Shown piece by piece: positions 39,323 to 59,724 of a stretch of 64,000 bases of DNA. The stretch is from Macrostomum hystrix (Eukaryota > Animalia > Platyhelminthes). The notes under the pieces were generated by a model. It did no database searches, was not told where the DNA came from, and saw nothing but the letters and a program-made list of their open reading frames with translations. Location of the stretch: the NCBI GenBank assembly GCA_950097015.1, contig CATNEN010000005.1, forward strand, positions 1,364,001-1,428,000. The letters run 5' to 3'. Every line of letters starts with the position of its first letter. Position 1 is the stretch's first letter. Position numbers and translations under genes: made by a program.

Positions 39323-42300
39323 CTAGAGCGACAGCTCGGGCCACAACGCGTGCCAACGATCGTGCCGCTGGTACGGCTGACGCAGCAGAGCCTCCCAGTG
39401 ACTGCGTCTCTCGCCTTCGCACTCGCTGCCAAGAGTCAGAGCGCCTGCGTCGAGTGACAAATATTGGGAGTGACAGATAAAAAGGGTGACAGTTATTGGG
39501 AATGACAGATATAGGGGGTGACAGATGTTGGGAGTGGCAGTTATTGGGAGTGACAGATATAGGGGATGACAGTTATTGGGAATAACAGATATAGGGGTGA
39601 CAGATGTTGGGAGTGGCAGTTATTGGGAGTGACAGATATAGGGGATGACAGTTATTGGGAGTGACAGATATAGGGGTGACAGTTATTGGGAGTGACAGAT
39701 ATAGGGGTGACAGTTATTGGGAGTGACAGATTTTGGGAGTGGCAGTTATTAGGAGTGACAGATATAGGGGGTGACAGATGTTGGGAGTGGCAGTTATTGG
39801 GAGTGACAGATATAGGGGTGACAGTTATTGGAGTGACAGATATAACGGGTGACAGTTATTGGGAATAACAGATATAGGGGGTGACAGATGTTGGGAGTGG
39901 CAGTTATTGGGAGTGACAGATATAGGGGGTGACAGTTATTGGGAGTGACAGTTATTGGGAGTGACAGATATAGGGGGTGACAGTTATTGGGAGTGACAGT
40001 TATTGGGAGTGACAGATATAGGGGATGACAGTTATTGGGAGTGACAGATTTTAGGAGTGACATATTTTAGGAGTGGCAGTTATTAGGAGTGACAGATATA
40101 GAGGTGACAGATATTGAGAGTGACAGATATTGGGAGTGACAGATATTGGGAGTGACAGACAAGGTGTAAAAGAATGTCGACTGAAATGAAATTTACAACG
40201 TTAAATATATATATAAAGGTGGGAATATTTTTTAAATATGAATTTAGAATTTTTTAATTATATAAGTCACTAAAATTCGTTAATTTTAGTGACATTTAAT
40301 TCACCGCTCACCCATAAAATCATTTTTCGAGCCAAAGTCCTTGTCCCAAACTGTAATCTCTAATATCTTCTCGCTGAGCTCCTGGGGCGAAACGATAAAG
40401 TAGAACTCCTTAAATGAAAATTTTGTGGAGGCGCGGATAAGTGACAGAATCAAATAAAGAGTGACAGAATTGAATATAGAGTGTGACAGAATCAAATAAA
40501 GAGTGACAGAATTGAATAAAGAGTGACAGAATCAAATAAAGAGTGACAGAATTGAATAAAGAGTGTGACAGAATCAAATAAAGAGTGACAGAATCAAATA
40601 AAGAGTGACAGAATTAAATAAAGAGTGACAGAATAGAATAAAGAGTGACAGAATTGAATAAAGAGTGACAGAATTGAATAAAGAGTGACAGAATCAAATA
40701 AAGAGTGACAGAATTGAATAAAGAGTGACAGAATCAAATAAAGAGTGACAGAATTGAATAAAGAGTGAGAGAATCAAATAAAGAGTGACAGAATTGAATA
40801 AAGAGTGACAGAATTGAATAAAGAGTGACAGAATTAAATAAAGAGTGACAGAATTAAATAAAGAGTGACAGAATTGAATAAAGAGTGACAGAATTGAATA
40901 AAGAGTGACAGAATCAAATAAAGAGTGACAGAATTGAATAAAGAGTGACAGAATCAAATAAAGAGTGACAGAATTGAATAAAGAGTGAGAGAATCAAATA
41001 AAGAGTGACAGAATTGAATAAAGAGTGACAGAATTGAATAAAGAGTGAGAGAATTAAATAAAGAGTGACAGAATCAAATAAAGAGTGACAGAATCAAATA
41101 AAGAGTGACAGAATTGAATAAAGAGTGACAGAATTGAATAAAGAGTGACAGAATCAAATAAAGAGTGACAGAATCAAATAAAGAGTGACAGAATTGAATA
41201 AAGAGTGACAGAATTGAATAAAGAGTGTGACAGAATCAAATAAAGAGTGACAGAATCAAATAAAGTGTGACAGAATTGAATAAAGAGTGACAGAATTAAA
41301 TAAAGAGTGACAGAATCAAATAAAGAGTGACAGAATTGAATAAAGAGTGACAGAATCAAATAAAGAGTGACAGAATTGAATAAAGAGTGAGAGAATCAAA
41401 TAAAGAGTGACAGAATTGAATAAAGAGTGACAGAATTGAATAAAGAGTGACAGAATTAAATAAAGAGTGACAGAATCAAATAAAGAGTGACAGAATCAAA
41501 TAAAGAGTGACAGAATTGAATAAAGAGTGACAGAATTGAATAAAGAGTGACAGAATCAAATAAAGAGTGACAGAATCAAATAAAGAGTGACAGAATTGAA
41601 TAAAGAGTGACAGAATCAAATAAAGAGTGACAGAATTGAATAAAGAGTGTGACAGAATCAAATAAAGAGTGACAGAATTAAATAAAGAGTGACAGAATTG
41701 AATAAAGAGTGACAGAATTAAATAAAGAGTGACAGAATCAAATAAAGAGTGACAGAATTGAATAAAGAGTGACAGAATTGAATAAAGAGTGTGACAGAAT
41801 CAAATAAAGAGTGACAGAATCAAATAAAGTGTGACAGAATTGAATAAAGAGTGACAGAATTGAATAAAGAGTGTGACAGAATCAAATAAAGAGTGACAGA
41901 ATCAAATAAAGAGTGACAGAATCAAATAAAGAGTGACAGAATTGAATAAAGAGTGACAGAATCAAATAAAGTGTGACAGAATTGAATAAAGAGTGTGAGA
42001 ATCATATAAAGAGTGACAGAATTGAATAAAATGTGACAGAATTGAAAAAAGAGTGACAGAATTGAATAAAGAGTGACAGAATTGAATAAAGAGTGAGAGA
42101 ATCAAATAAAGAGTGACAGAATTGAATAAAGAGTGACAGAATCAAATAAAGAGTGACAGAATTGAATAAAGAGTGACAGAATTGAATAAAGAGTGTGACA
42201 GAATCAAATAAAGAGTGACAGAATCAAATAAAGTGTGACAGAATTGAATAAAGAGTGACAGAATTAAATAAAGAGTGACAGAATCAAATAAAGAGTGACA

Positions 42301-45300
42301 GAATTGAATAAAGAGTGACAGAATCAAATAAAGAGTGACAGAATTGAATAAAGAGTGAGAGAATCAAATAAAGAGTGACAGAATTGAATAAAGAGTGACA
42401 GAATTGAATAAAGAGTGACAGAATTAAATAAAGAGTGACAGAATCAAATAAAGAGTGACAGAATCAAATAAAGAGTGACAGAATTGAATAAAGAGTGACA
42501 GAATTGAATAAAGAGTGACAGAATCAAATAAAGAGTGACAGAATCAAATAAAGAGTGACAGAATTGAATAAAGAGTGACAGAATCAAATAAAGAGTGACA
42601 GAATTGAATAAAGAGTGTGACAGAATCAAATAAAGAGTGACAGAATTAAATAAAGAGTGACAGAATTGAATAAAGAGTGACAGAATTAAATAAAGAGTGA
42701 CAGAATCAAATAAAGAGTGACAGAATTGAATAAAGAGTGACAGAATTGAATAAAGAGTGTGACAGAATCAAATAAAGAGTGACAGAATCAAATAAAGTGT
42801 GACAGAATTGAATAAAGAGTGACAGAATTGAATAAAGAGTGTGACAGAATCAAATAAAGAGTGACAGAATCAAATAAAGAGTGACAGAATCAAATAAAGA
42901 GTGACAGAATTGAATAAAGAGTGACAGAATCAAATAAAGTGTGACAGAATTGAATAAAGAGTGTGAGAATCATATAAAGAGTGACAGAATTGAATAAAAT
43001 GTGACAGAATTGAAAAAAGAGTGACAGAATTGAATAAAGAGTGACAGAATTGAATAAAGAGTGAGAGAATCAAATAAAGAGTGACAGAATTGAATAAAGA
43101 GTGACAGAATCAAATAAAGAGTGACAGAATTAAATAAAGAGTGACAGAATCAAATAAAGAGTGACAGAATTGAATAAAGAGTGACAGAATTGAATAAAGA
43201 GTGACAGAATTGAATAGAGTGTGACAAAATCAAATAAAGAGTGACAGAATCAAATAAAGAGTGACAGAATCAAATAAAGAGTGACAGAATCAAATAAAGA
43301 GTGACAGAATTGAATAAAGAGTGACAGAATTGAATAAAGACTGACAGAATTAATTAAAGAGTGACAGAATTGAATAGAGTGTGAAAGAATCAAATAAAGA
43401 GTGACAGAATCAAATAAAGAGTGAGAGAATCAAATAAAGAGTGAGAGAATCAAATAAAGAGTGACAGAATCAAATAAAGAGTGACAGAATTAAATAAAGA
43501 GTGACAGAATTGAATAAAGAGTGGCAGAATTGAATAAAGAGTGAGAGAGTCAAATAAAGAGTGACAGAATCAAATAAAGAGTGAGAGAATCAAATAAAGA
43601 GTGACAGAATCAAATAAAGAGTGACAGAATTAAATAAAGAGTGGCAGAATTGAATAAAGAGTGAGAGAATCAAATAAAGAGTGAGAGAATCAAATAAAGA
43701 GTGACAGAATCAAATAAAGAGTGAGAGAATCAAATAAAGAGTGACAGAATCAAATAAAGAGTGACAGAATTAAATAAAGAGTGACAGAATTGAATAAAGA
43801 GTGACAGAATTGAATAAAGAGTGACAGAATTAAATAGAGAGTGACAGAATAGAATAAAGAGTGAGAGAATCAAATAAAGAGTGACAGAATTGAATAAAGA
43901 GTGACAGAATCAAATAAAGAGTGACAGAATTGAATAAAGAGTGACAGAATCAAATAAAGAGTGACAGAATTGAATAAAGAGTGAGAGAATCAAATAAAGA
44001 GTGACAGAATTGAATAAAGAGTGACAGAATTGAATAAAGAGTGACAGAATTAAATAAAGAGTGACAGAATCAAATAAAGAGTGACAGAATCAAATAAAGA
44101 GTGACAGAATTGAATAAAGAGTGACAGAATTGAATAAAGAGTGACAGAATCAAATAAAGAGTGACAGAATCAAATAAAGAGTGACAGAATTGAATAAAGA
44201 GTGACAGAATTGAATAAAGAGTGTGACAGAATCAAATAAAGAGTGACAGAATCAAATAAAGTGTGACAGAATTGAATAAAGAGTGACAGAATTAAATAAA
44301 GAGTGACAGAATTGAATAGAGTGTGAAAGAATCAAATAAAGAGTGACAGAATCAAATAAAGAGTGAGAGAATCAAATAAAGAGTGAGAGAATCAAATAAA
44401 GAGTGACAGAATCAAATAAAGAGTGACAGAATTAAATAAAGAGTGACAGAATTGAATAAAGAGTGACAGAATTGAATAAAGAGTGACAGAATCAAATAAA
44501 GAGTGACAGAATCAAATAAAGAGTGACAGAATTGAATAAAGAGTGACAGAATCAAATAAAGAGTGACAGAATTAAATAAAGAGTGACAGAATCAAATAAA
44601 GAGTGACAGAATCAAATAAAGAGTGACAGAATTAAATAAAGAGTGACAGAATTGAATAAAGAGTAAAAGAATTGAACAAAGATTGACATAATAAAAGCCA
44701 TAGTGTCGATAAAGGCTGACGGATTGGGAGCTAGAGAACAGTGTCAGAAAAGATCTCGACCTCTTCAAAATCCGGATTTAACGTGCGTCTTTTAACCTCC
44801 GTTTTGAACTTTTTCGGCGTTCCATCGTCCGGTCGAAGTCGACTGAAATAAAATTTCACAAAACACGTGTTTTATAACAAACATTCTCAAAATAACTCAA
44901 TAACTAAACTCAATAGAACCTCACAGCTTAACGAACGGATCACTGTATCCATTGGGATCCATCGCAATGAGATTAACGCATTGAATAATCCTCACAGCCA
45001 GCTCAGTTTTGGCTGGTGCATAGTACAGGCCGATGAGGATTTTTCCACGATCATCTTCTTCTTGTTTTAGTGACCGGTCGAGATCCTGTAGGTTTGAAGA
45101 ATTCCATATTGTTTGTTTGGTTGTCTTCAGAATGGGATTCTTTCGTAGAATGATTTTAAACGGTTTCAAAATTGACTTTGTCAATTTTTACTATTATGAT
45201 CGTTTCTAAGAATGAGATACGATTATTTCAAAATAATTTTTTTTTGCTTTCTAAGAAAGGATTTTGCATCGCTTCTAAGAAAAGGGGTTGTTTTGAATTC

Positions 45301-48300
45301 GTGGCAAGAATGGTGATGATAGTTTGTAAATTTGTAATTTATATTTGCGATGACAGAATTGGGCAGGATCTAACTTAGCCTTCTCAAAATCGAAAATGGG
45401 ATAATTTCTTTAAAGAAAGATTATATAGTCTTTATAGGTAGTTCTTACTAATTCTTATGGTGTACGGCATGGAATTGTAATTATAAGATGTGTAAGACAG
45501 GTACTATTTTGAACAGACAGGGTGTTGCAAATGCTTAGATTAACCTAGATTTTAGTAAAGTCGTCAGAATATTAAATTAAGTACCTTTGCACATAATAGA
45601 TTCTGCTATATGTTACAAAAGCATATTAGGAAAAAGATAGTATTTTACGAGTATGAGCAAAATAATACTAGACGAGGCTGAGAAAGAATCCGATACAATG
45701 TTCCAACTCTCTTTGATGTATCAATCGGGAAAATTAGTTCCAGAAATGCGACAACGTGTGAGTCGGAATGAAATTGCTTATCTTTAATAACTCACAAAGT
45801 TTTTTGGCTGCAAAAACACTTGGGAATATTCCTTCTTGCTAGTCCGTAGAAGCTGGCTCAGCGGGTAGAGAATCTCGCCCATCCAGTCGAAACCGATCGT
45901 GTCCTCGTCCAGAACTGAAATCCTGATTTTTTAGGGGGGGGGGCATCTCGTTGACGACTGAATTTTGAGTTTCTGAGATCAAATCTTTTGCTGCACGCAT
46001 TATATCTTTCAGGCTATTTGAACTTTTTTAATGTCGTGCATAAGCTACTTGGCTGACGCCTGGCAAGACTAAAGTTTCTGGCGGGCTTCAGGCAAATTAT
46101 ATTCGATCTGTGGAAACTCGTGTCTAGTTTTTCAATCAATTTTTGTCAGTAAAAAATAAAACTCGAATAAGCACGTACTTGTTTCGAACTCTAATTCTTG
46201 CTGTCTATTGCCTTTTTACCTATCCTGCAATTATTCACCTAACACCGACGTTCTCACCTCGTTATCCATAATGCACAAAACACCAAAAAAATTCCTTCCC
46301 CCTTTGTACACCTTTGGACACCCCCCACGCCAAACCTGATTCAGAGGAGTTTCTAAAAATAGAATTACAGCGAGCATTTCGTCCGCCCTCTCGGCACCCA
46401 CCTCACGCCCCACACATTCTATTGTAGATTTTCTAAAAGTAGAACCACGCCGAGTATATCCTCTTTTATTCTTAACTGATCCTCGAAAGGACATCGAGTA
46501 TGTATTCGATATGAATTATCGAAAAACTCGAATAGGAATAAAGATTGCTGGGGCTTCGATTATATATAGCTACATCAAAAGCTAGGAAATTAACTTAAAC
46601 CTGAGCATTTTGGAGTCAATATCAGCTTTCGTAACGCCGCTGTAGCAGAACTCCTCGTCCCATAAGGGATTCAACGTGCGGTGGCAGGTGCGAGAGCGCA
46701 TCTTTGTTCGCTTCCCAGTGTCCGGCAGCAGGTGCATCTTCACGTACGGATCGGAGAGGCCGTTGTGATCGTGAGCTCTCAGATTGTCACCCTTAATGAT
46801 GCGAATATATAGGGCCGCTTTGCCAGGAATGTACTGCAGCACAAAGTGCAACGTGCCCAGGCCCCGGTCTTCAAAGTAAGCGGCTGGGCTGGATGTTTCA
46901 TACTGCTGCTGCTGCAAGCCAGTCGGGCCTTGTACAGCTGGACTTCGCTCGGGTGTAGCGGTTGCTTTTGGAAGGAGCAAGGAGGGGTTTAAAGTAACGA
47001 TACAAAGCAGCAGGTTCAATTATATATTTCTTAGATGAACCCTTACCTCCGTATTTGACGCTTGCTTTCGCTCCTGCAGACAATCCATTGCTCTCGCTAT
47101 CATGCTTGGCGTCTGCAATGAAAAAAGTCGTGATGAAACTGATTTGTAATTTGTTATGCGAAATCGCTTTCGATTATAATTTTAATTTTTTATCTAACGA
47201 GCGCAGTGATCAGAGGGTGGAGGACAACGACCTCGATTCTAAAAATAGAATTTTTATTTCTGTGTATTCCTGCAAACACCCACCTCACGCCAAGATCTTA
47301 AAAATAGAATTCTCTCCAGTCTTCCTGTTGAAAGCCACCTCACGCCACGTTTCTAAAAATAGAATTCTTTTTCCACGCTTCATTCCTATACCTTCTTAGG
47401 CTTTCTTAACTATAAAAGTGTACCACTTCAATGTATTTGAAACGTAAATCGATGCAATGCGACGCGACGCAATTACGAGCGTAACCTTTCAACGGCACAC
47501 TGTCTTTAGCGTCGCCGCGGCCTCCAGCGACATCTTCATCCGCCTCTGAGTCTTCGTTTTCGTGCAAGGCGTCGCCGCTTTTGCTGGCGTGGCTGCGCCT
47601 TCGGCCAGGCAGAGCTTCGGGACAGCAGCAGAGAAGGTTGCGCAGGGAATTCATGCGGGAGAGTCTCGTTATTAGCTTGTTATAGTGCAAACTGACTTCG
47701 CAGCAGCCGCGTTTTTTATGAGCTAGCTGAGCTAGTCTGATATTTGAGGCTAACTATGCCCTGTTGTAGCATCAAGGCTATTATGTGGATGGATTTCTAT
47801 AACCATCTTTATGGGAACTGCTTAACACAGGCGGTCCTATAGCAGGCTTGGGAGCCCCAACCCGCACTGTCGTGTGTCCATTCAGCTGAAGCCAATCGTA
47901 GAGGCCATTGCGACTGCCAACCCCCTCCCAAACAGCCATCCCAATGGAAGTTTTCAGTTTCACCCCCAGCATTCACAATCATTTATTTGTCGTTTTCCCA
48001 ATCTATATAGAGATTACTGTGCGATAATGCTGGTTTAAATGCGCCCATTCGTGTAGCTAGCACTGACAATTGGGATCAGGGTCACGGGCCGGGATAGAAA
48101 TATTTGTTTAAACTGACACACACACACACACACACAGCTCTTCCTCTTCTCAGTCCACAGTTTCCCAGGTTAATCAAACCCGGTCCACTTCACGAATGAG
48201 CTCTCAGTTGAGCTTTTTTTATCTATCCGAGGTTTATTGTATTTTTCTTGGCCTATTTTGGGTGTACTATTGAGCTGGGGAGGGAGAATGAGTCGAAAGA

Positions 48301-51300
48301 TTCGTGGAAAAATATTCCCAGATAATCCCATTTTGTGGGATTTAAGCAGGTGTGCTCGAAAAGCAGGAAGCCATCATTCTCAAGGTCTAGCGAGTGTTTC
48401 CTGTTCACAGATGCAGTGGTTTAGATCCAAACCAAATGCTTGAATCTAGCTATTCAGAATGCTTACCAAATCATGACCTAATAAAAATTGCTTACTTCAC
48501 TCACTCCTTCACTCACTCACTCACTCACTCACTCACTCACTCACTCACTCACTCACTCACTCACTCACTCACTCACTCACTCATTCACTCACTCACTCAT
48601 TCACTCACTCACTCACTCACTCACTCACTCACTCACTCACTCACTCACTCACTCACTCATTCACTCACTCACTCACTCACTCACTCACTCACTCACTCAC
48701 TCACTCACTCACTCACTCACTCACTCATTCACTCACTCACTCACTCACTCACTCACTCACTCACTCACTCACTCACTCACTCACTCACTCACTCACTCAC
48801 TCACTCACTCACTCACTCACTCACTCACTCACTCACTCACTCACCTACTAACTTACTTACTTACATACGTAGATATTTACTGAACTTACTACTTATTCAC
48901 TTACCTTAACATTAGTTTTTGTTGTCGATTTTAGCATTTTTAGCCAAAAATTAACGGCGTTAGACATAAATTTTTTTTCTAGAAAATACACATTACGAGC
49001 TCGTATCTAAGCTCGTAAAGTTTTATTTGAACAGATTTTGCAACCCACCCCAATTATGAAGACTGTCTCATGCTGCGTTTATTCTTTGGTCTTCATTAGA
49101 AACGTTGCAAAGGCTAGGCTAATCTAACAGTATACAGCAGATAAGTATTCACCGCCATTGTGCAACTGAGTTAGTCTAGTGCAATAAAAAATGCGCATGA
49201 GCACAGAAGGTAGATAAATGGTAAGTGGAAAACTCAGCCCAGTTTTTCCCATGAGAGTTATTGCCCCGACTGACTACCGCCATCGAAAAAGTACACAGTA
49301 AAGATGGCAATTATGGCGCGTAGTCTTGTGGTGAATTCTTTGCTGTACTTTTCTTATAATTAGCCGAACTCGTAGCAATTAGAGTCACTTTTACTCGTAG
49401 AATCGTAGCAAGGTTCGAAGATACAGTCAAGAAAGTTTCAAAGCATGAGCTACGAGTGTTTATCGGGCATGTTTTGATATATCGTTTTTCGATAACTTTA
49501 AAAAATGGTGACTAACATCATCTCTGCTTACTGCAAGTAGTGCAATTTGGCTTTCGACGATAAGTTATTATAGAAATGCAATCCAACGAACCTGAATAAG
49601 TAGTACGAGGATCCGTTTCAGCGTCCGTTTCAGATTCGGTGTCAACTCTGTCCTCATCTTCATCAGTGGAATCTCTTGCGTATGGCAACCGATTGTAGAA
49701 CCATCCTCCAGACTTTTTCCAAAGCTGAAATGTTTTATTTTGTGTTTTACTTGTTTAGACTGCACTAGGCGTATTGCAGGTTGCTGACTTTAGTATTACT
49801 CCCCTTTACTATCTCTAACGATAAGAGGATTAAAAAAATATTACTTCGAGGACTTCGCCGGTAAAAAAAGGCTGCTTATTTTAGTGAGCTAGCAGATTAG
49901 CCAGCCTAATCCTTCGATTGAGATATTTTAAAAAGGAATAATTCCTCAACACTACGTGCATATAGCTAAGTAAAGAGGCAAGCTATATCAACGTTGCTAC
50001 TAAATTTACTATCAGGACACTTCACTGCGGTGCAGAATACTGCATGTTTCTAAAAATAGATACACACAACCCCACCCCATAGTTTTCTACCCCCACGACG
50101 CCCACCTCACTTCCCTAGTCCTTCAGTGTTTCTAAAAATAGCTATTTGTGGTGTATTTTTTATCTTTCGCATTTTTTATCCTTTGAGGCAACCAACGACG
50201 CATCAGACTAAAAAACATCGCGTCTATCATATTCAGTACCTGAAGTTCCTTATGGCAGATTTTACATTCCCAGTCGTCATCTGATTTTGTATTTAAATAA
50301 CTAGCCAGTGAACTAGTCGCTTCATTGCTTCGAAGTTGCTGCCGATAATGTGGTCTAGTTCCGCATTTTTTACAAGTTGCCTGTCGTGGACAAGTTGATC
50401 AAATGACTTTCATGTATACCTTTTTAGTGTCTTCATGCACGAGGAGTTTCGTAAGGCGTACTCACCAGTCCACAGATGCGACACGCCATGCTGCAGTTGT
50501 TTTTTCCTATCAGGTTCTTCAGCGATCGTAGCAACAAACCGGTGGTTAATCTGTCGCCGCAAAGAAGGCAAAATTGTCGACCATCTCCAATAGCCATTGA
50601 TTTCAAAGCGTTTAACTTTGAAATATAGTGCCTTTGATGGTAATAGTTTATAAATGAGGCATGATTGGGACAGTAAATTAGGTAAGAGCAAAAGGAAACG
50701 ATGCGGGAGGGGGAAATTAGAAGAGAGGATGAACGGGGAAAGAGGAAGTGAGATAAAAGAAGAAGACAAATGAGACTAAATAAATAAGGGAGACGAGGGA
50801 AGAGGGAGATGAGAGAGATGAGGGAGATGAGGGAGAGAAAGAAAGGGAAGGAGAGGAAGTAGAGGAGGGAGAGGAGGGAGATCAGGGAGAGGAAGTAGAG
50901 AAGGGAGAGGAGGGAGATCAGGGAGAGGAAGTAGAGGAGGGAGAGGAGGGAGATCAGGGAGAGGAAGTAGAGGAGGGAGAGGAGGGAGATCAGGGAGAGG
51001 AAGTAGAGGAGGGAGAGGAGGGTGATCAGGGAGAGGAAGTAGAGGAGGGAGAGGAGGGAGATCAGGGAGAGGAAGTAGAGGAGGGAGAGGAGGGTGATCA
51101 GGGAGAGGAAGTAGAGGAGGGAGAGGAGGGAGATCAGGGAGAGGAAGTAGAGGAGGGAGAGGAGGGAGATCAGGGAGAGGAAGTAGAGGAGGGAGAGGAG
51201 GGAGATCAGGGAGAGGAAGTAGAGGAGGGAGAGGAGGGAGATCAGGGAGAGGAAGTAGAGGAGGGAGAGGAGGGAGATCAGGGAGAGGAAGGAGAGGAGG

Positions 51301-54300: not shown

Positions 54301-57109
54301 AGACAGGTAGGAACACCTGTTAGACAGGTAGGAACATCTGTTAGACAGGTAGGAACATCTGTTAGACAGGATGGAACATCTGTTAGACAGGAAGCAACAT
54401 ATATTAGACAGGTAGGAACATCTGTTAGACAGGTAGGAACATCTGTTAGACAGGAATGGAAAACCTGTTAGACAGGAATGAATATCTGTTAGACAGGTAG
54501 GAACATCTGTTAGACAGGTAGGAACATCTGTTAGACAGGAAGGAACACCTGTTAGACAAGTAGGAACATCTGTTAGACAGGTTCTCTACCTGTTAGACAG
54601 GTAGGAACATCTGTTAGACAGGTAGGAACATCTGTTAGACAGGTAGGAACATCTGTTAGACAGGTAGGAACATCTGTTAGACAGGTTCTCTACCTGTTAG
54701 ACAGGTAGGAACATCTGTTAGACAGGTAGGAACATCTGTTAGACAGGTAGGAACATCTGTTAGACAGGTAGGAACATCTGTTAGACAGGTTCTCTACCTG
54801 TTAGACAGGTAGGAACATCTGTTAGACAGGTAGGAACATCTGTTAGACAGGTAGGAACATCTGTTAGACAGGTAGGAACATCTGTTAGACAGGTAGGAAC
54901 ATCTGTTAGACAGGTAGGAACATCTGTTAGACAGGAAGGAACACCTGTTAGACAAGTAGGAACATCTGTTAGACAGGTTCTCTACCTGTTAGACATCTGT
55001 TAGACAGGTAGGAACATCTGTTAGACAGGTAGGAACATCTGTTAGACAGGTAGGAACATCTGTTAGACAGGTAGGAACATCTGTTAGACAGGTAGGAACA
55101 TCTGTTAGACAGGTTCTCTACCTGTTAGACAGGTAGGAACACCTGTTAGACAGGTAGGAACATCTGTTAGACAGGTAGGAACATCTGTTAGACAGGTAGG
55201 AACATCTGTTAGACAGGTAGGAACATCTGTTAGACAGGTAGGAACATCTGTTAGATAGGTAGGAACATCTGTTAGACAGGTAGGAACATCTGTTAGACAG
55301 GTTCTCTACCTGTTAGACAGGTAGGAACACCTGTTAGACAGGTAGGAACATCTGTTAGACAGGTAGGAACATCTGTTAGACAGGTAGGAACATCTGTTAG
55401 ACAGGTAGGAACATCTTTTAGACAGGTAGGAACATCTGTTAGACAGGTTCTCTACCTGTTAGACAGGTAGGAACATCTGTTAGACAGGTAGGAACATCTG
55501 TTAGACAGGTAGGAACATCTGTTAGACAGGTTCTCTACCTGTTAGACAGGTAGGAACATCTGTTAGACAAGAAGGAACATCCGATAGACTGTTATCGAAA
55601 AGGAACAATATGCCTATCATGCTTGAATGGAAAACTGTGTCAAGAAACTTAAGCACGCGAAAAGCCGTACCCTGTTCGCACAAGTGCGAACTTTTCGCTA
55701 AGTTGAGTGCTATTGCTAATGATATTTGCTTTTTTGCGTTAAAAGTCGAATTTCGACCGAGAAAGTGAGAGCCACCGAAAATTAGAAATCGTTTTCTTTT
55801 CACAAGCAAAAGAATAAAAAAACCGATGATGCAGACAAGATACGCTTGTTAAGCTATTCTATTAGGTGCGATTCGAATCGAAACTTAAAACCTTTGTAAA
55901 GTGCAAGTCTAACAGGTTCTATATCTGTTAGACAGGTTCTCTAACTGTTAGACAGGTTCTTGACCTGTTAGATAGGTTCTCTATCTGTTAGATAGGTTCT
56001 TGACCTGTTGGACAGGTTCTCTATCTGTCAGACAGGTTCTCTATCTGTCAGACAGGTTCTCTATCCGTCAGACAGGTTCTCTATTCTGTCAGACAGGTTC
56101 TCTATTCTGTCAGACAGGTTCTCTATCTGTCAGACAGGTTCTCTATCTGTCAGACAGGTTCTCTATCTGTCAGACAGGTTCTCTATCTGTCAGACAGGTT
56201 CTCTATCTGTCAGACAGGTTCTCTATCTGTCAGACAGGTTCTCTACCTGTTAGACAGGTTCTTGACTTGTTAGACAGGTTCTCTATCTGTCAGACAGGTT
56301 CTCTATCTGTCAGACAGGTTCTCTGTCTGTCAGACAGGTTCTCTATCTGTCAGACAGGTTCTCTACCTGTTAGACAGGTTCTCTAATTGTTAGACAGGTT
56401 CTCTAGTTGTTAGACAGGTTCTCTACCTGTTAGACAGGTTCTCTATCTGTTAGACAGGTTCTCTACCTGTTAGACAGGTTCTCTACCTGTTAGACAGGTT
56501 CTCTAGTTGTTAGACAGGTTCTCTAGTTGTTAGACAGGTTCTCTAGTTGTTAGACAGGTTCTCTAGTTGTTAGACAGGTTCTCTAGTTGTTAGACAGGTT
56601 CTCTAGTTGTTAGACAGGTTCTCTAGTTGTTAGACAGGTTCTCTAGTTGTTAGACAGGTTCTCTAGTTGTTAGACAGGTTCTCTAGTTGTTAGACAGGTT
56701 CTCTAGTTGTTAGACAGGTTCTCTAGTTGTTAGAAAGGTTCTCTAGTTGTTAGACAGGTGCCCTTTCATGCATTTATCCTCAATGCCAATTGTTGTTTTC
56801 ACATAATCATCAGAGTGTGCTAAATTGGCTACATCAATTTTTCGCAAAGCACAAAACGCGAAACACAATGTGTATTGTTAATGGACCGTTTTGCATTCAG
56901 GTTTGCTAGTTTTTTTCCAGAATGCGACGATATTTTTAAATTGAAATTTGCACAGCTACCTAGCGAATTAACTGGTCTTTTGTGTCTAAGCAAGGTTTCC
57001 TCAGAGAAAAACAATGGAATAATGATGCAGTAACGATGCGGTTGTTAAGCACTCACTTGGAACGAAGGCACAACTGTCTGTCGGATGGGCAGGGCCAATG
57101 ATTCCACAT
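39323..57109 (-). CDS. RPH3A: Rabphilin (Rab3/Rab27 effector): Rab-binding domain with 4 CxxC, linker, C2A, C2B; about 541 aa in 12 exons
   Basis: Exons 57109-57057 ([14 protein letters not shown]), 53325-53173 (IRKGWS...ENGRIR), 50631-50466 ([10 protein letters not shown]...CRIC), 50380-50240 (CKKC...WECKIC), 49724-49592 ([10 protein letters not shown]), 47073-47047, 46964-46601, 45922-45796, 45085-44925, 44842-44761, 40408-40312 and 39444-39323. Total 1626 nt, phases consistent. Both C2 domains keep the acidic Ca2+ ligands. Confidence 0.93.
39460..40160. repeat. Compound minisatellite (GTTATTGGGAGTGACAGATATAGGGGGTGACA)
   Basis: Fills the last rabphilin intron. Confidence 0.88.
40440..44690. 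repeat. 20-bp minisatellite (GAGTGACAGAATTGAATAAA), about 4.2 kb
   Basis: Fills a C2B intron of rabphilin; carries a 968-bp higher-order duplication. Confidence 0.96.
47486..47654 (-). CDS. RPH3A: Putative alternative first coding exon of rabphilin ([13 protein letters not shown]...)
   Basis: ATG at 47654; phase-1 donor AAAG|GTTACG at 47486/47485 fits the phase-1 exon at 47073; no phase-1 acceptor upstream in this frame. Confidence 0.6.
48499..48870. repeat. (TCAC)n microsatellite ending in (TTAC)n
   Basis: About 85 units in rabphilin intron 5. Confidence 0.96.
50780..51500. repeat. 36-bp purine-rich minisatellite
   Basis: ATCAGGGAGAGGAAGTAGAGGAGGGAGAGGAGGGAG units. Confidence 0.9.
52253..53018. 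repeat. 14-15-bp minisatellite (GGGGAGTGACTGAT)
   Basis: Tandem units in rabphilin intron 2. Confidence 0.92.
53690..55570. repeat. 21-bp minisatellite (CTGTTAGACAGGTAGGAACAT)
   Basis: Tandem units in rabphilin intron 1. Confidence 0.93.
55905..56760. repeat. 20-bp minisatellite (CTGTYAGACAGGTTCTCTAY)
   Basis: Tandem units in rabphilin intron 1. Confidence 0.93.
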
Positions 57110-57774
57110 CTTCCTATCTCTCTCTCTCGTGTTTTTTACGTCCGAATTGTCTGCTTCTGCAGTGGGGTCTAGAAAATTGCTTTTCCGTCTTGTCTTGTCA
57201 AGGGCCGATTCAGTCAGCGAAGTCGTTTATCAAGTCGTTTCAGGAAATTTGCTGCTACTTATTACTTATTTTTTTCCGTCGACTCGCTTGTACGAGCCGT
57301 AGTTCTATGATTTCCTCTAGTGGAAAAGCATATTGCCTTCTAGACTCAGAAGCGGTATTTGGCGATAAGAAGAAGTGCCTAGATAAGCTGGTTCGTACAC
57401 TCACCCAATAAGTTGGTCAGTAAGGAGCTCAGTAAAGATTCGGTTTTGTCACAATTGCCATACGGTGAATCTACCCTGAAATTGTACAATAGAATAATAA
57501 TTATTATTTACTAGGCTGTCGCGTGAAATATTTTCATCTGTACATCGGCATCGTCTGGTTATCAGTAGAAATACAACTAACTGGGGAAACACCACGGGGT
57601 ATTTCAAATACCCACTGCCTAATACTTCACGATGGCTTCCAAACTGGATGACCGATTTTTTTTAAAAGTCCATAATAATAATTAATTATTTATTACACCT
57701 GCCCCAATCGGGCCAGATGTGCAGCCGACAGCACAGCCGCAGCTATTGCGCGGCGCATCTGAAGGCTGAAGGTA

Positions 57775-57976
57775 TTCGTACGGCTGTTCAGTCCATGGAC
57801 TGGGGGGACGCTCCACCCACCTCCAATTATCCCAGCTGATGCTGGTACCAGCTGGGTGAACTGAAGCAAAGCAGAGTTAAGTGTCTTGCTAAAGGACACA
57901 AATTGTTCCAGTGGAGTCGGGAATCGAACCCCCGACCTTGAAGTCGTGAGTCCGGCGCTCTAACCACTCGGCTCTA
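57775..57976 (-). mobile_element. tRNA-derived SINE copy 2
   Basis: Minus strand GCCGAGTGGTTAGAGCG (box A), GGTTCGATTCCC (box B), GTGTCCTTTAGCAAGACACTTAAC...CACCCAGCTG core, CAGTCCATGGACTG palindrome. Confidence 0.8.
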
Positions 57977-57983
57977 ACCACTG

Positions 57984-58290
57984 TACCTGTTAGACACTTT
58001 CTATACCTGTTAGACACTTTCTATACCTGTTAGACACTTTCTATACCTGTTAGACACTTTCTATACCTGTTAGACACTTCCTATACCTGTTAGACACTTT
58101 CTATACCTGTTAGACACTTCCTATACCTGTTAGACACTTTCTATACCTGTTAGACACTTTCTATACCCGTAAGACAGCTTCTATACCTGTTAGACAGGTT
58201 CTCTACCAGTTAGTCAGCTTCTATACCTGTTAGACAGGTTCTCTACCAGTTAGACAGATTCTATACCAGTTACACAGGTTCTCGACCTGT
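57984..58290. repeat. 20-bp minisatellite (CTGTTAGACACTTTCTATAC)
   Basis: Lies between rabphilin and the neuropeptide gene. Confidence 0.9.
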
Positions 58291-58535
58291 TCCTGTTAGT
58301 TTCATGTTCTATTCCTGTTGGAGGCCATTAACTCAAGTATCAGCCCGAAGGACTCAATTGATGACCTTGACGATTAACTATTAATTTTTCAGTTCCACAG
58401 CTGTAGGGTATTTAGAATTCGCTGAAAAAAGCAAAGCAACAAAGCCAGGAACAATAGCCAACTATAACAATATAACAATAGTCAACTCCACTTGGCTGAG
58501 TTGAAATCAAAGGCCTAGAGTTCGCCAACTCTGAG

Positions 58536-58594
58536 CCAATCACCGATAAAATGCGTGTTCTATAATCTTAGTGACACTCGTCTCATCTTATTGG
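58536..58594. promoter_or_regulatory. Candidate promoter: opposed CCAAT (58536) and ATTGG (58590) boxes flanking TATAAT (58561)
   Basis: Motifs lie about 100-150 bp upstream of a putative non-coding exon (58688-58776) of the neuropeptide gene. Confidence 0.35.
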
Positions 58595-59097
58595 CTATAG
58601 CGGAGACCCGTTTGGGCATAGACTCAAGGACGGCTATATTGTTAGTCTCTGAGCAGATTATTCTATCCCTCTTTGCTGCTCTCACAGGTGCTGGTTCTGT
58701 ATCATTGGCTTCTGGGAAAACGAGCTAATTACATATATTTGCATCGCTGCTTCCGATTTCAAGTCGTTCAGAAAAGGTGAGTTGTGAAGAATTGAGCAGT
58801 GCCAATAGTATGCGAGTATATTATTTGACATAGATAATTATAAGTAGCTGTTGATAGTTTCATCAAGTCAGAATTACATCTCACCTAGATATTATCTCTA
58901 GTTGAGATTGGCCAGGATACTGTGTCTTTCAGAAAGCAAATTGCAAGTTAGATAATGCGGGGGAAATTTTGCAATACAAAATGAACACTTTTTTAGTGTC
59001 AGAGAACAAATTTTTCATTTAAAAGCTCGATTTTTTGCAGACAAAACTACGCGGAAAACGAAACAGACGAGAGACTTGGCCCTAACAGGTAGAAAAC

Positions 59098-59724
59098 ATG
59101 AGGACAACGATAATTTCATTGTGGCTGCTGTTAGTCACCATGCTGATTGCTTGCTGGAGCACCTCTGCTTTTGGTCAAGACGAGAAAATAGGTAAACATC
59201 AATAATAAACATGTTTGTCATTTTTTCTAAGCATTTTTAAAACAATGAGCGATTATACTTTGTCTAACATATTTGCATGAATAGGAACCGATGTTCAATA
59301 CGCTGAAGCGGTCCTGCCAAACGACTGGGATTCTGGGATCGAATCTGTAGTTCCGAGTGGATTCGGAAAGCGAGGCTACGCCAGATTCGGAAAACGCGGC
59401 TACGCCAGATTCGGAAAACGCGGCTACGCCAGATTCGGAAAACGCGGCTACGCCAGATTCGGAAAACGCGGCTACGCCAGATTCGGAAAGCGAGGCTACG
59501 CCAGATTCGGAAAACGCGGCTACGCCAGATTCGGAAAGCGAGGCTACGCCAGATTCGGAAAGCGAGGCTACGCCAGATTCGGAAAACGCGGCTACGCCAG
59601 ATTCGGAAAGCGAGGCTACGCCAGATTCGGAAAACGCGGCTACGCCAGATTCGGAAAACGTGATTCGGAAATGCCTGCCAACGAAGAGGCGCTGATGATT
59701 GACATTCCAAGTTACATTGTTTAA
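59098..59724 (+). CDS. FMRFamide-like neuropeptide precursor, 12 x GYARFamide (177 aa, 2 coding exons)
   Basis: Exon 59098-59191 encodes signal peptide MRTTIISLWLLLVTMLIACWSTSAFG; GT-AG intron 59192-59284; exon 59285-59724 encodes ...SGFGKR(GYARFGKR)x12 DSEMP...SYIV*. Confidence 0.95.

What the first reader, a model, noticed from the sequence alone, without database searches (positions are those of the whole stretch)
47486..47654. Internal alternative first exon may convert rabphilin into a Doc2-like, possibly palmitoylated isoform
Seen: between the Rab-binding exons (57109-49592) and the C2 exons lies an ATG-initiated exon, [22 protein letters not shown]..., ending in a phase-1 donor. Long-form exon 5 also ends in phase 1, and this exon has no phase-1 acceptor upstream, so it cannot be a cassette exon and fits only as a mutually exclusive start. 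The short form would be about 382 aa (Cys triplet, basic patch, C2A, C2B). Established: Doc2 proteins are rabphilin relatives lacking the Rab-binding domain, and N-terminal Cys clusters next to basic residues are typical S-palmitoylation sites. Inference: one invertebrate gene may produce both a Rab-recruited vesicle effector and a lipid-anchored Ca2+ sensor, convergent on Doc2/synaptotagmin.
Basis: partly seen in the sequence, partly recalled or inferred. Interest (0 to 1): 0.76.

Follow-up and report, generated by a model that had tools for sequence, protein, structure and literature searches.

The report
Rabphilin gene's second start exon
A flatworm rabphilin gene really does make a second messenger RNA that starts at an internal exon. 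It encodes a 395-residue protein with both calcium-binding C2 domains but no Rab-binding head, like vertebrate Doc2. The proposed lipid anchor on its triple-cysteine tip is still untested.

Summary
The exon is real and expressed. Spliced contigs from four public runs of one study join 47486 to 47112 at a GT..AG intron on the minus strand. They continue through both C2 domains.

Two runs also hold the long form, with exon 5 (ends 49592) joined to the same acceptor. The two 5' exons are therefore mutually exclusive.

- The acceptor is 47112, not 47073, which adds 13 codons. The short protein is 395 aa, not 382.
- Four open, phase-compatible AG sites do lie upstream. The contigs simply read through them.

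The C2 domains score best against Doc2 and rabphilin-3A, and the acidic calcium ligands are present. The closest proteins are Macrostomum lignano fragments at 79-87% identity.

Not shown:
- The transcription start, because contigs cannot give one.
- Conservation of the Cys-Cys-Cys exon, because every route was blank or blocked.
- Palmitoylation.

Internal promoters that remove the Rab-binding part are known for RIM. I found no description of one for rabphilin. The scan noted another hidden first exon (neurexin) in this genome, but not this one.

The parts
47486..47654 (-). Coding part of the alternative first exon. It has 56 codons plus 1 base ([22 protein letters not shown]...VPLK), with a phase-1 GT donor at 47485-47484.
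   Evidence: The joint 47486->47112 appears in contigs of X1-X4. G+C is 0.60 and GC3 0.64.
47655..47849 (-). 5' untranslated part of the same exon. Contigs run colinear with the genome up to 47750 (X1), 47763 (X2), 47797 (X3) and 47849 (X4). The true start is not determined. The longer forms contain upstream ATGs at 47772 and 47806, each opening an 18-codon uORF.
   Evidence: table 8.
47850..48400 (-). Presumed internal promoter region. Low-depth RNA contigs lie at 47782-47936, 47910-48080 and 48346-48400, while the other introns of the gene show none. The region is unique within the window.
   Evidence: tables 2 and 8; (blastn found only the self match).
47047..47112 (-). Shared 66-nt micro-exon, phase 1 in and phase 1 out ((D)[21 protein letters not shown]). 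It is the common acceptor for both 5' exons.
   Evidence: joints 47112/47486 and 46964/47047. The loose end at 47115 equals the end of exon 5..
46601..46964 (-). Linker plus most of C2A.
   Evidence: Pfam C2 3.4e-14. The best single-domain PDB matches are Doc2 alpha/beta C2A at 78 bits and rabphilin-3A C2A at 72 bits. Joints.
45796..45922 (-). End of C2A, including loop 3 ([13 protein letters not shown]).
44925..45085 (-). Inter-C2 linker and start of C2B (loop 1, [12 protein letters not shown]).
44761..44842 (-). C2B polybasic strand exon ([14 protein letters not shown]).
40312..40408 (-). C2B loop-3 exon ([14 protein letters not shown]). Its start is fixed by the loose end of the contigs. 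Its end is inferred from the GT donor.
   Evidence: loose end at 44760.
39323..39444 (-). Last coding exon (…[25 protein letters not shown], then stop). Boundaries are inferred from the AG acceptor and the reading frame.
   Evidence: It resembles the C-termini of M. lignano P0008 and P0006.
49592..49731 (-). Long-form exon 5, the end of the Rab-binding region ([10 protein letters not shown]...). Its phase-1 donor is spliced to 47112 in runs X2 and X4.
   Evidence: (loose ends).
57054..57109 (-). Long-form first coding exon ([18 protein letters not shown]). It matches the conserved WVCPNDRQLALRAK start of invertebrate rabphilins.
   Evidence: Alignment in Craxton 2010, additional file 47.

Best explanation
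One minus-strand rabphilin gene of a macrostomid-like flatworm gives two classes of mRNA that differ only at the 5' end.

The long class starts at 57109. It encodes the Rab-binding head and splices exon 5 (ends 49592) to the 66-nt exon at 47112.

The short class starts inside the 2.5-kb intron between exon 5 and that micro-exon. It most likely comes from its own promoter, somewhere upstream of 47750-47849. It uses the ATG at 47654 and splices 47486 to the same 47112 acceptor, in the same phase.

The short mRNA encodes a 395-aa protein made of a unique 56-residue head, a disordered linker, C2A and C2B.

Shown here: the junctions, the coexistence of both forms, the open frame, and the rabphilin/Doc2 type of the C2 domains with their acidic ligands.

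Inferred:
- The short form has an independent start site.
- Without the Rab-binding domain it cannot be recruited to vesicles by Rab3/27. It would act as a Doc2-like soluble or membrane-tethered Ca2+/phospholipid-binding factor.
- The LLCCCP triplet, followed by RRR, is S-acylated and supplies the replacement membrane anchor. I put this last step at about 40-50%.
For: - The joint 47112/47486 (CT..AC on the plus strand) is in contigs of all four runs. In X1 and X3 a single contig of 1577 or 1646 nt runs from the 5' UTR through the alternative exon, the micro-exon, C2A and C2B.
- Five introns are removed exactly and have zero depth, so these unlabelled runs are RNA.
- X2 and X4 also carry loose ends at 47115 whose letters equal 49595-49624, the end of exon 5. 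This is the long form.
- No joint enters the alternative exon from upstream, and no spliced-leader-like loose end is seen.
- The junction codon is GAC in both forms, and the frame stays open for 395 codons.
- 47654 is the first ATG in the shorter UTRs.
- The exon's G+C and GC3 are coding-like.
- C2A hits Doc2 and rabphilin best. The C2B of the M. lignano relative hits Doc2b C2B at 160 bits and rabphilin C2B at 153 bits, against about 100 for Syt1 C2B.
- Precedent: RIM1 beta and RIM2 gamma arise from internal promoters and lack the Rab3-binding part (PMC10169678).
Against: - Contigs cannot show a transcription start. Low-depth contigs continue to 48080 and 48346-48400, so the start may be dispersed or further upstream.
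- The Kozak context is weak (C at -3), and the longer UTRs hold two uORFs.
- No relative of the 56-aa exon was found. phmmer against 1.84 billion representatives gave only two spurious repeat proteins, and the word search gave nothing. These searches were poorly suited to the question.
- All four runs come from one study.
- There is no protein-level evidence and no test of acylation.
Confidence: 0.75

Rival explanations
1. There are two neighbouring genes rather than one. On this reading, a Noc2/Rph3al-like Rab-binding gene (57109-49592) sits next to a Doc2-like tandem-C2 gene that starts at the 47654 exon. The 'long form' would be an occasional conjoined read-through transcript.
For: The short-form path dominates the assemblies. 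It is the only path in X1 and X3. The alternative-exon contig has depth 15.4 against 18.6 for the C2 body in X2, and 6.0 against 4.6 for the long-form contig in X4 (the tool warns that depth is a poor measure). Tetrapods have exactly such a linked Rph3al-Doc2b pair (PMC2823689).
Against: The exon 5->47112 junction is in frame, canonical, and assembled in two of the four runs. No terminal exon or polyadenylation evidence was seen for a Rab-binding-only product. The distinction from 'one gene, two promoters' is largely semantic.
Confidence: 0.12
2. The short mRNA is real, but its N-terminus is only a start peptide. The Cys triplet is not acylated, and the protein is a soluble, Doc2-like C2 tandem that reaches membranes only through Ca2+/PIP2 binding.
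For: Doc2 itself has no lipid anchor. The exon matches no Pfam family and no detectable relative, so there is no sign of constraint on the cysteines. The rest of the exon is acidic low-complexity linker.
Against: A cysteine cluster within 11 residues of the N-terminus, preceded by LL and followed by RRR, is the classic context of dually acylated neuronal proteins such as GAP-43 and PSD-95 (general knowledge). The TM-less synaptotagmin-17 (B/K protein) also uses one; the title of Fukuda & Mikoshiba 2001 is cited in PMC5217085.
Confidence: 0.4
3. The exon is non-productive. It would be a cryptic donor used within retained-intron or pre-mRNA molecules from the upstream promoter, or a non-coding or NMD-targeted 5' variant.
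For: There is weak RNA coverage upstream of the exon at 47782-48080 and 48346-48400. The ORF length alone is not beyond chance. The longer UTRs contain uORFs.
Against: Coverage falls to zero at 48164-48286 in all runs and is several-fold lower upstream than over the exon. The exon's depth is comparable with that of the C2 exons. The frame from 47654 runs uninterrupted through both C2 domains. The only other in-frame Met downstream that I saw by eye lies inside C2A (VKMHLL).
Confidence: 0.06
4. The 5' end is made by spliced-leader trans-splicing, which is common in Macrostomum, rather than by an internal promoter.
For: About 20% of Macrostomum genes are SL trans-spliced, and about 1% have several SL sites (PMC10468722).
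Against: None of the four contig 5' ends carries letters unlike the genome, and no loose end was reported upstream of 47654. An SL-borne ATG spliced at 47112 would be out of frame.
Confidence: 0.03

Closest known systems
Rabphilin-3A / invertebrate Rph
   Same: It is the same gene. The long form has the WxCPSDRQLxLRxK start, zinc-finger cysteines and the SGxWF motif. Its tandem C2 domains score with rabphilin C2A and C2B. The fifth C2A acidic ligand sits one residue early, as Craxton notes for invertebrate Rph.
   Different: The short isoform lacks the whole Rab-binding domain, which is the feature that defines a rabphilin. The papers I could search describe no such isoform. The Caenorhabditis alternative N-terminal exons keep the Rab-binding domain.
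Vertebrate Doc2 alpha/beta
   Same: The architecture matches: a short N-terminal region plus C2A and C2B, with no TM segment and no Rab-binding domain. The C2 domains are the nearest solved relatives. Doc2 is held to be the C-terminal fission product of an Rph3a duplicate (PMC2823689).
   Different: This is an isoform of the rabphilin gene, not a separate gene. No Munc13-interacting (MID) sequence is recognisable, though this was not formally tested. A Cys cluster sits at the N-terminus instead. Invertebrates are reported to have no Doc2 gene.
RIM1 beta / RIM2 beta, gamma (internal-promoter isoforms of a Rab3 effector)
   Same: Internal promoters produce forms that lack the Rab3-binding N-terminus but keep the C-terminal C2 domain(s) and a short unique head (PMC10169678).
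   Different: It is a different gene family, and these are vertebrate genes. No Cys cluster is known to me in the gamma heads.
Synaptotagmin-17 (B/K protein) and other N-terminal Cys-cluster proteins
   Same: It is a tandem-C2 protein without a TM segment (PMC7883739). Its membrane targeting depends on an N-terminal cysteine cluster (title of Fukuda & Mikoshiba 2001, seen).
   Different: Its C2 domains belong to the synaptotagmin lineage, and it is a separate gene. Acylation of the flatworm head is untested.

Membership tests
Rabphilin (Rph3a) | N-terminal Rab3/27-binding domain (helix, zinc finger, SGAWFF motif) | tested here: inconclusive
   The long form has [18 protein letters not shown], CxxC pairs and [10 protein letters not shown]. 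These line up with Craxton's alignment. Exon-by-exon Pfam and PDB searches gave nothing significant. The short isoform has none of this.
Rabphilin (Rph3a) | C-terminal tandem C2 domains of the Rph/Doc2 type | tested here: met
   The C2A exon scores 78 bits against Doc2a/b C2A and 72 against rabphilin C2A as single domains. M. lignano P0008, a close relative, scores 160 bits against Doc2b C2B and 153 against rabphilin C2B, against about 100 for Syt1 C2B.
Doc2 | Tandem C2 without a Rab-binding domain or TM segment | tested here: met
   The spliced contigs go from the 56-aa head straight to the micro-exon, C2A and C2B. The head has no hydrophobic stretch.
Doc2 | N-terminal Munc13-interacting domain (MID) | not tested
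   The scans returned no model for MID. The head exon hit no Pfam family. No Doc2 N-terminal sequence was at hand by reference for comparison.
Doc2 | A separate gene, the fission product of an Rph3a duplicate | tested here: not met
   The short form shares every exon from 47112 downstream with the long rabphilin form.
Doc2 / Ca2+-sensing C2 tandems | Five acidic Ca2+ ligands in each C2 domain | tested here: met
   By inspection. C2A has [10 protein letters not shown] and LDEDTIGFD, with the fifth ligand one residue early. C2B has [10 protein letters not shown] and [10 protein letters not shown]. Actual Ca2+ binding was not tested.
N-terminally S-acylated proteins (GAP-43, PSD-95, Syt17 type) | Cys cluster near the N-terminus with hydrophobic and basic neighbours | tested here: met
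   Residues 9-11 are CCC, preceded by LL and followed by P...RRR.
N-terminally S-acylated proteins (GAP-43, PSD-95, Syt17 type) | Demonstrated thioester-linked acylation and acylation-dependent membrane binding | not testable with these tools
   This needs acyl-biotin exchange and mutants.
Alternative-promoter isoforms | Distinct 5' exon joined to a common acceptor, mutually exclusive with the upstream exons | tested here: met
   The joints 47486->47112 and 49592->47112 both occur. No contig joins exon 5 to the alternative exon.
Alternative-promoter isoforms | Independent transcription start site | tested here: inconclusive
   Four contigs end at 47750-47849, and depth drops sharply upstream. 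Contigs cannot show a start.

The most novel reading that the evidence does not exclude
The internal promoter is old and functional. On this reading, invertebrate rabphilin genes already carried a Doc2-like transcription unit nested inside them. Here it is even the major mRNA, with a lipid anchor replacing Rab recruitment. The vertebrate split into Rph3al and Doc2b would then only have separated two pre-existing units. 'Invertebrates lack Doc2' would be true of genes but not of proteins.
Probability: 0.15. Interest if true: 0.7.

Novelty: new variant of a known kind. Interest (0 to 1): 0.48.

Why it matters
Rabphilin is defined by Rab-dependent recruitment to secretory vesicles. Doc2, its Rab-independent cousin, is thought to exist only in vertebrates, as a fission product of a rabphilin duplicate.

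An invertebrate rabphilin gene whose apparently commonest transcript already encodes the Doc2 layout gives a concrete intermediate for that fission. It also means that knock-downs or antibodies aimed at 'rabphilin' in flatworms would hit two proteins with different targeting.

The Cys-triplet head offers a simple, testable swap of membrane-targeting device, from Rab binding to lipid anchor, within one gene.

On the ordinary side, internal promoters that trim the N-terminus are common, and they are already known for the Rab3 effector RIM.

Tried and rejected
**Conservation of the 56-aa head**
- phmmer against 1.84 billion representatives gave two hits, both tandem-repeat proteins.
- The word search gave no candidate; it sees only proteins of 31-98 aa.
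- Searching with the C2A exon and then with M. lignano P0003 found only N-terminally truncated M. lignano gene-model fragments. No N-terminus could be compared.
- The look-up of encoding contigs for P0003, P0004, P0005, P0006 and P0008 all returned 'not on record', so no M. lignano DNA could be fetched.
- These blanks say little. Representatives are clustered at 50% identity, isoforms collapse into one entry, and no eukaryotic genome collection was at hand.

**Rab-binding exons.** Exon-wise Pfam and PDB searches gave nothing significant (one search was a length slip). The assignment rests on motifs.

**Literature**
- No paper describing a rabphilin isoform without the Rab-binding domain was found.
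- Staunton 2001 and Fukuda & Mikoshiba 2001 are not held.
- A term search of Craxton's supplements was uninformative.

**Rejected readings**
- Cassette exon: the contigs read through the possible acceptors.
- Retrocopy in DNA: introns have zero depth, and the runs have the size of transcriptomes.
- Use of the 47073 acceptor: no such joint was seen in any run.

Full report
**Observation**

On the minus strand, 47654-47486 reads ATG followed by 55 more codons and one extra base ([56 protein letters not shown]). It is followed by GTTACG, a phase-1 donor.

The long-form exon 5 is about 49731-49592. It contains [10 protein letters not shown], the rabphilin SGAWFF-type motif, and also ends in phase 1 before GTTCGT. 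The long-form start, [18 protein letters not shown], is at 57109. It matches the conserved N-terminus of invertebrate rabphilins in Craxton's alignment.

By sequence alone the open frame is not striking:
- Four of 66 ATGs in 44700-50000 are open for 56 codons.
- Random sequence stays open 3% of the time at local intron composition, and 16% at the exon's own composition.

The exon is compositionally coding-like. Its G+C is 0.60 and GC3 0.64, against 0.375 in the adjoining intron and a GC3 of 0.65 in the C2A exon. It is unique in the window.

**RNA evidence**

The look-up of sequencing runs returned four runs of one study and one organism, each holding about 0.53 of the sampled words of 46550-47760. 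That share is about what the exonic fraction with the alternative exon included would give (about 0.5-0.6), and more than without it (about 0.35).

Laying their contigs on 44720-48400 gave exact GT..AG joints:

| Joint (plus-strand coordinates) | Note |
|---|---|
| 44842/44925 | |
| 45084/45795 | cut +1 |
| 45921/46600 | cut +1 |
| 46964/47047 | |
| 47112/47486 | present in all four runs |

The introns have zero depth. The runs are therefore RNA although not labelled so, and a genomic retrocopy is excluded.

In X1 and X3 one contig (1577 and 1646 nt) runs from the 5' UTR through the alternative exon, the micro-exon, C2A and C2B. In X2 and X4 the assembly breaks at 47112-47115, and loose ends there read the reverse complement of 49595-49624, which is the end of exon 5. 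Both the 49592->47112 and 47486->47112 forms therefore exist.

No contig joins exon 5 to the alternative exon. No letters unlike the genome, such as a spliced leader, precede it. The contigs stay colinear with the genome up to 47750, 47763, 47797 and 47849.

- The acceptor is 47112, not 47073. The 39 extra bases are in frame. The shared micro-exon is 47047-47112.
- Four AGs upstream of the ATG would be phase-compatible and open (exon starts 47695, 47722, 47731, 47749). The claim that the exon 'cannot be a cassette' does not follow from the sequence. It holds because the RNA reads through those sites.

**Gene model of the short form** (exon by exon, never joined for a search)

| Exon (window coordinates) | Length |
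|---|---|
| 47486-47654 | 169 nt |
| 47047-47112 | 66 nt |
| 46601-46964 | 364 nt |
| 45796-45922 | 127 nt |
| 44925-45085 | 161 nt |
| 44761-44842 | 82 nt |
| 40312-40408 | 97 nt |
| 39326-39444 | 119 nt, then stop |

- The total is 1185 nt, or 395 codons.
- The last two exons lie outside the laid stretch. The start of the first is fixed by the contigs' loose end. The rest is inferred from splice signals and frame.
- The junction codon at 47112 is GAC in both isoforms.
- 47654 is the first ATG of the shorter UTRs. The longer UTRs contain two 18-codon uORFs, and the Kozak context is weak.

**What the protein is**

- The C2A exon hits Pfam C2. Among solved single domains it scores best with Doc2 alpha/beta C2A (78 bits) and rabphilin-3A C2A (72 bits).
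- The closest database proteins are fragmentary Macrostomum lignano models at 79-87% identity.
- The C2B of one such fragment, P0008, scores 160 bits with Doc2b C2B and 153 with rabphilin C2B, against about 100 for synaptotagmin-1 C2B.
- The acidic ligands are in place: [10 protein letters not shown] and LDEDTIGFD in C2A, and [10 protein letters not shown] and [10 protein letters not shown] in C2B. The fifth C2A ligand sits one residue early, as Craxton describes for invertebrate rabphilins.
- The Rab-binding exons could not be confirmed statistically piece by piece. They rest on motifs.

**Mechanism**

Shown: two mutually exclusive 5' exons feed one acceptor, giving a form with the Rab-binding head and a form with a 56-residue Cys-cluster head.

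Inferred:
- An internal promoter lies upstream of 47750-47849. Depth falls several-fold there and is zero at 48164-48286. Weak contigs at 47782-48080 and 48346-48400, which are absent from the other introns, suggest dispersed or additional upstream initiation.
- The short form cannot be Rab-recruited and behaves like Doc2.
- The LLCCCP...RRR head is S-acylated. This is plausible by analogy with GAP-43-type heads (general knowledge) and with TM-less synaptotagmin-17, but it is untested.

Rough contig depths suggest that the short form is the commoner mRNA in these samples. The tool warns that depth is a poor measure.

**Comparison with what is known**

- Craxton (PMC2823689) reports a single Rph and no Doc2 in invertebrates. 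She explains Doc2 as the C-terminal product of duplication and fission of Rph3a.
- The alternative N-terminal exons she notes in Caenorhabditis keep the Rab-binding domain.
- RIM1 beta and RIM2 beta/gamma are the nearest precedent: internal-promoter isoforms of a Rab3 effector that lack the Rab-binding part.
- I found no description of a rabphilin isoform without its Rab-binding domain.
- I therefore file this as a new variant of a known kind. It works like Doc2, but it is not a Doc2 gene.

**Limits**

- All RNA comes from one study.
- Contigs show neither starts nor strand.
- Conservation of the head could not be tested.
- There is no protein or acylation evidence.

Noticed in passing
Craxton 2010 additional file 47; not in the window: The N-terminal extension of Caenorhabditis rbf-1 variant 1 carries a Cys cluster after basic residues (C. 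elegans ...RKCLKLCCCTAQ..., other species ...LGGLCCTAQ...). This is a second rabphilin with a possible acylation motif, here in front of the Rab-binding domain. The text is machine-read from a PDF, so the letters need checking.
   Followed up: no
window 47782-48080 and 48346-48400: Low-depth RNA contigs (depth about 3) lie upstream of the alternative exon in three of four runs, while the other introns of the gene show none. They could be a minor distal start, promoter-associated RNA or pre-mRNA.
   Followed up: partly
window 48497-48844; 44000-44696 and on to about 40500: The introns are packed with arrays. There is a (TCAC)x87 microsatellite between exon 5 and the alternative exon. A 20-bp unit repeated about 35 times continues, by the ORF list, through most of the 4.3-kb intron inside C2B.
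   Followed up: no
window 47250-47375: The intron between the alternative exon and the micro-exon holds three loose copies of a roughly 60-bp unit containing AATTCTATTTTTAG (seen).
   Followed up: no
window 50135-50606: The zinc-finger region of the long form has two candidate CxxCG segments (…[13 protein letters not shown]… and …[12 protein letters not shown]…), and its cysteine spacing differs from other rabphilins. Exon boundaries here are unverified, and Pfam did not recognise the pieces.
   Followed up: partly
P0003/P0004/P0005/P0008 versus P0006/P0007 (M. lignano): M. lignano has at least two rabphilin-like tandem-C2 lineages, about 58% identical to each other. All are present only as N-terminally truncated gene models.
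   Followed up: no
window 57057-59724: Earlier first-reader notes place a putative GYARFamide neuropeptide minisatellite gene head-to-head with the rabphilin long-form promoter. I did not examine it.
   Followed up: no
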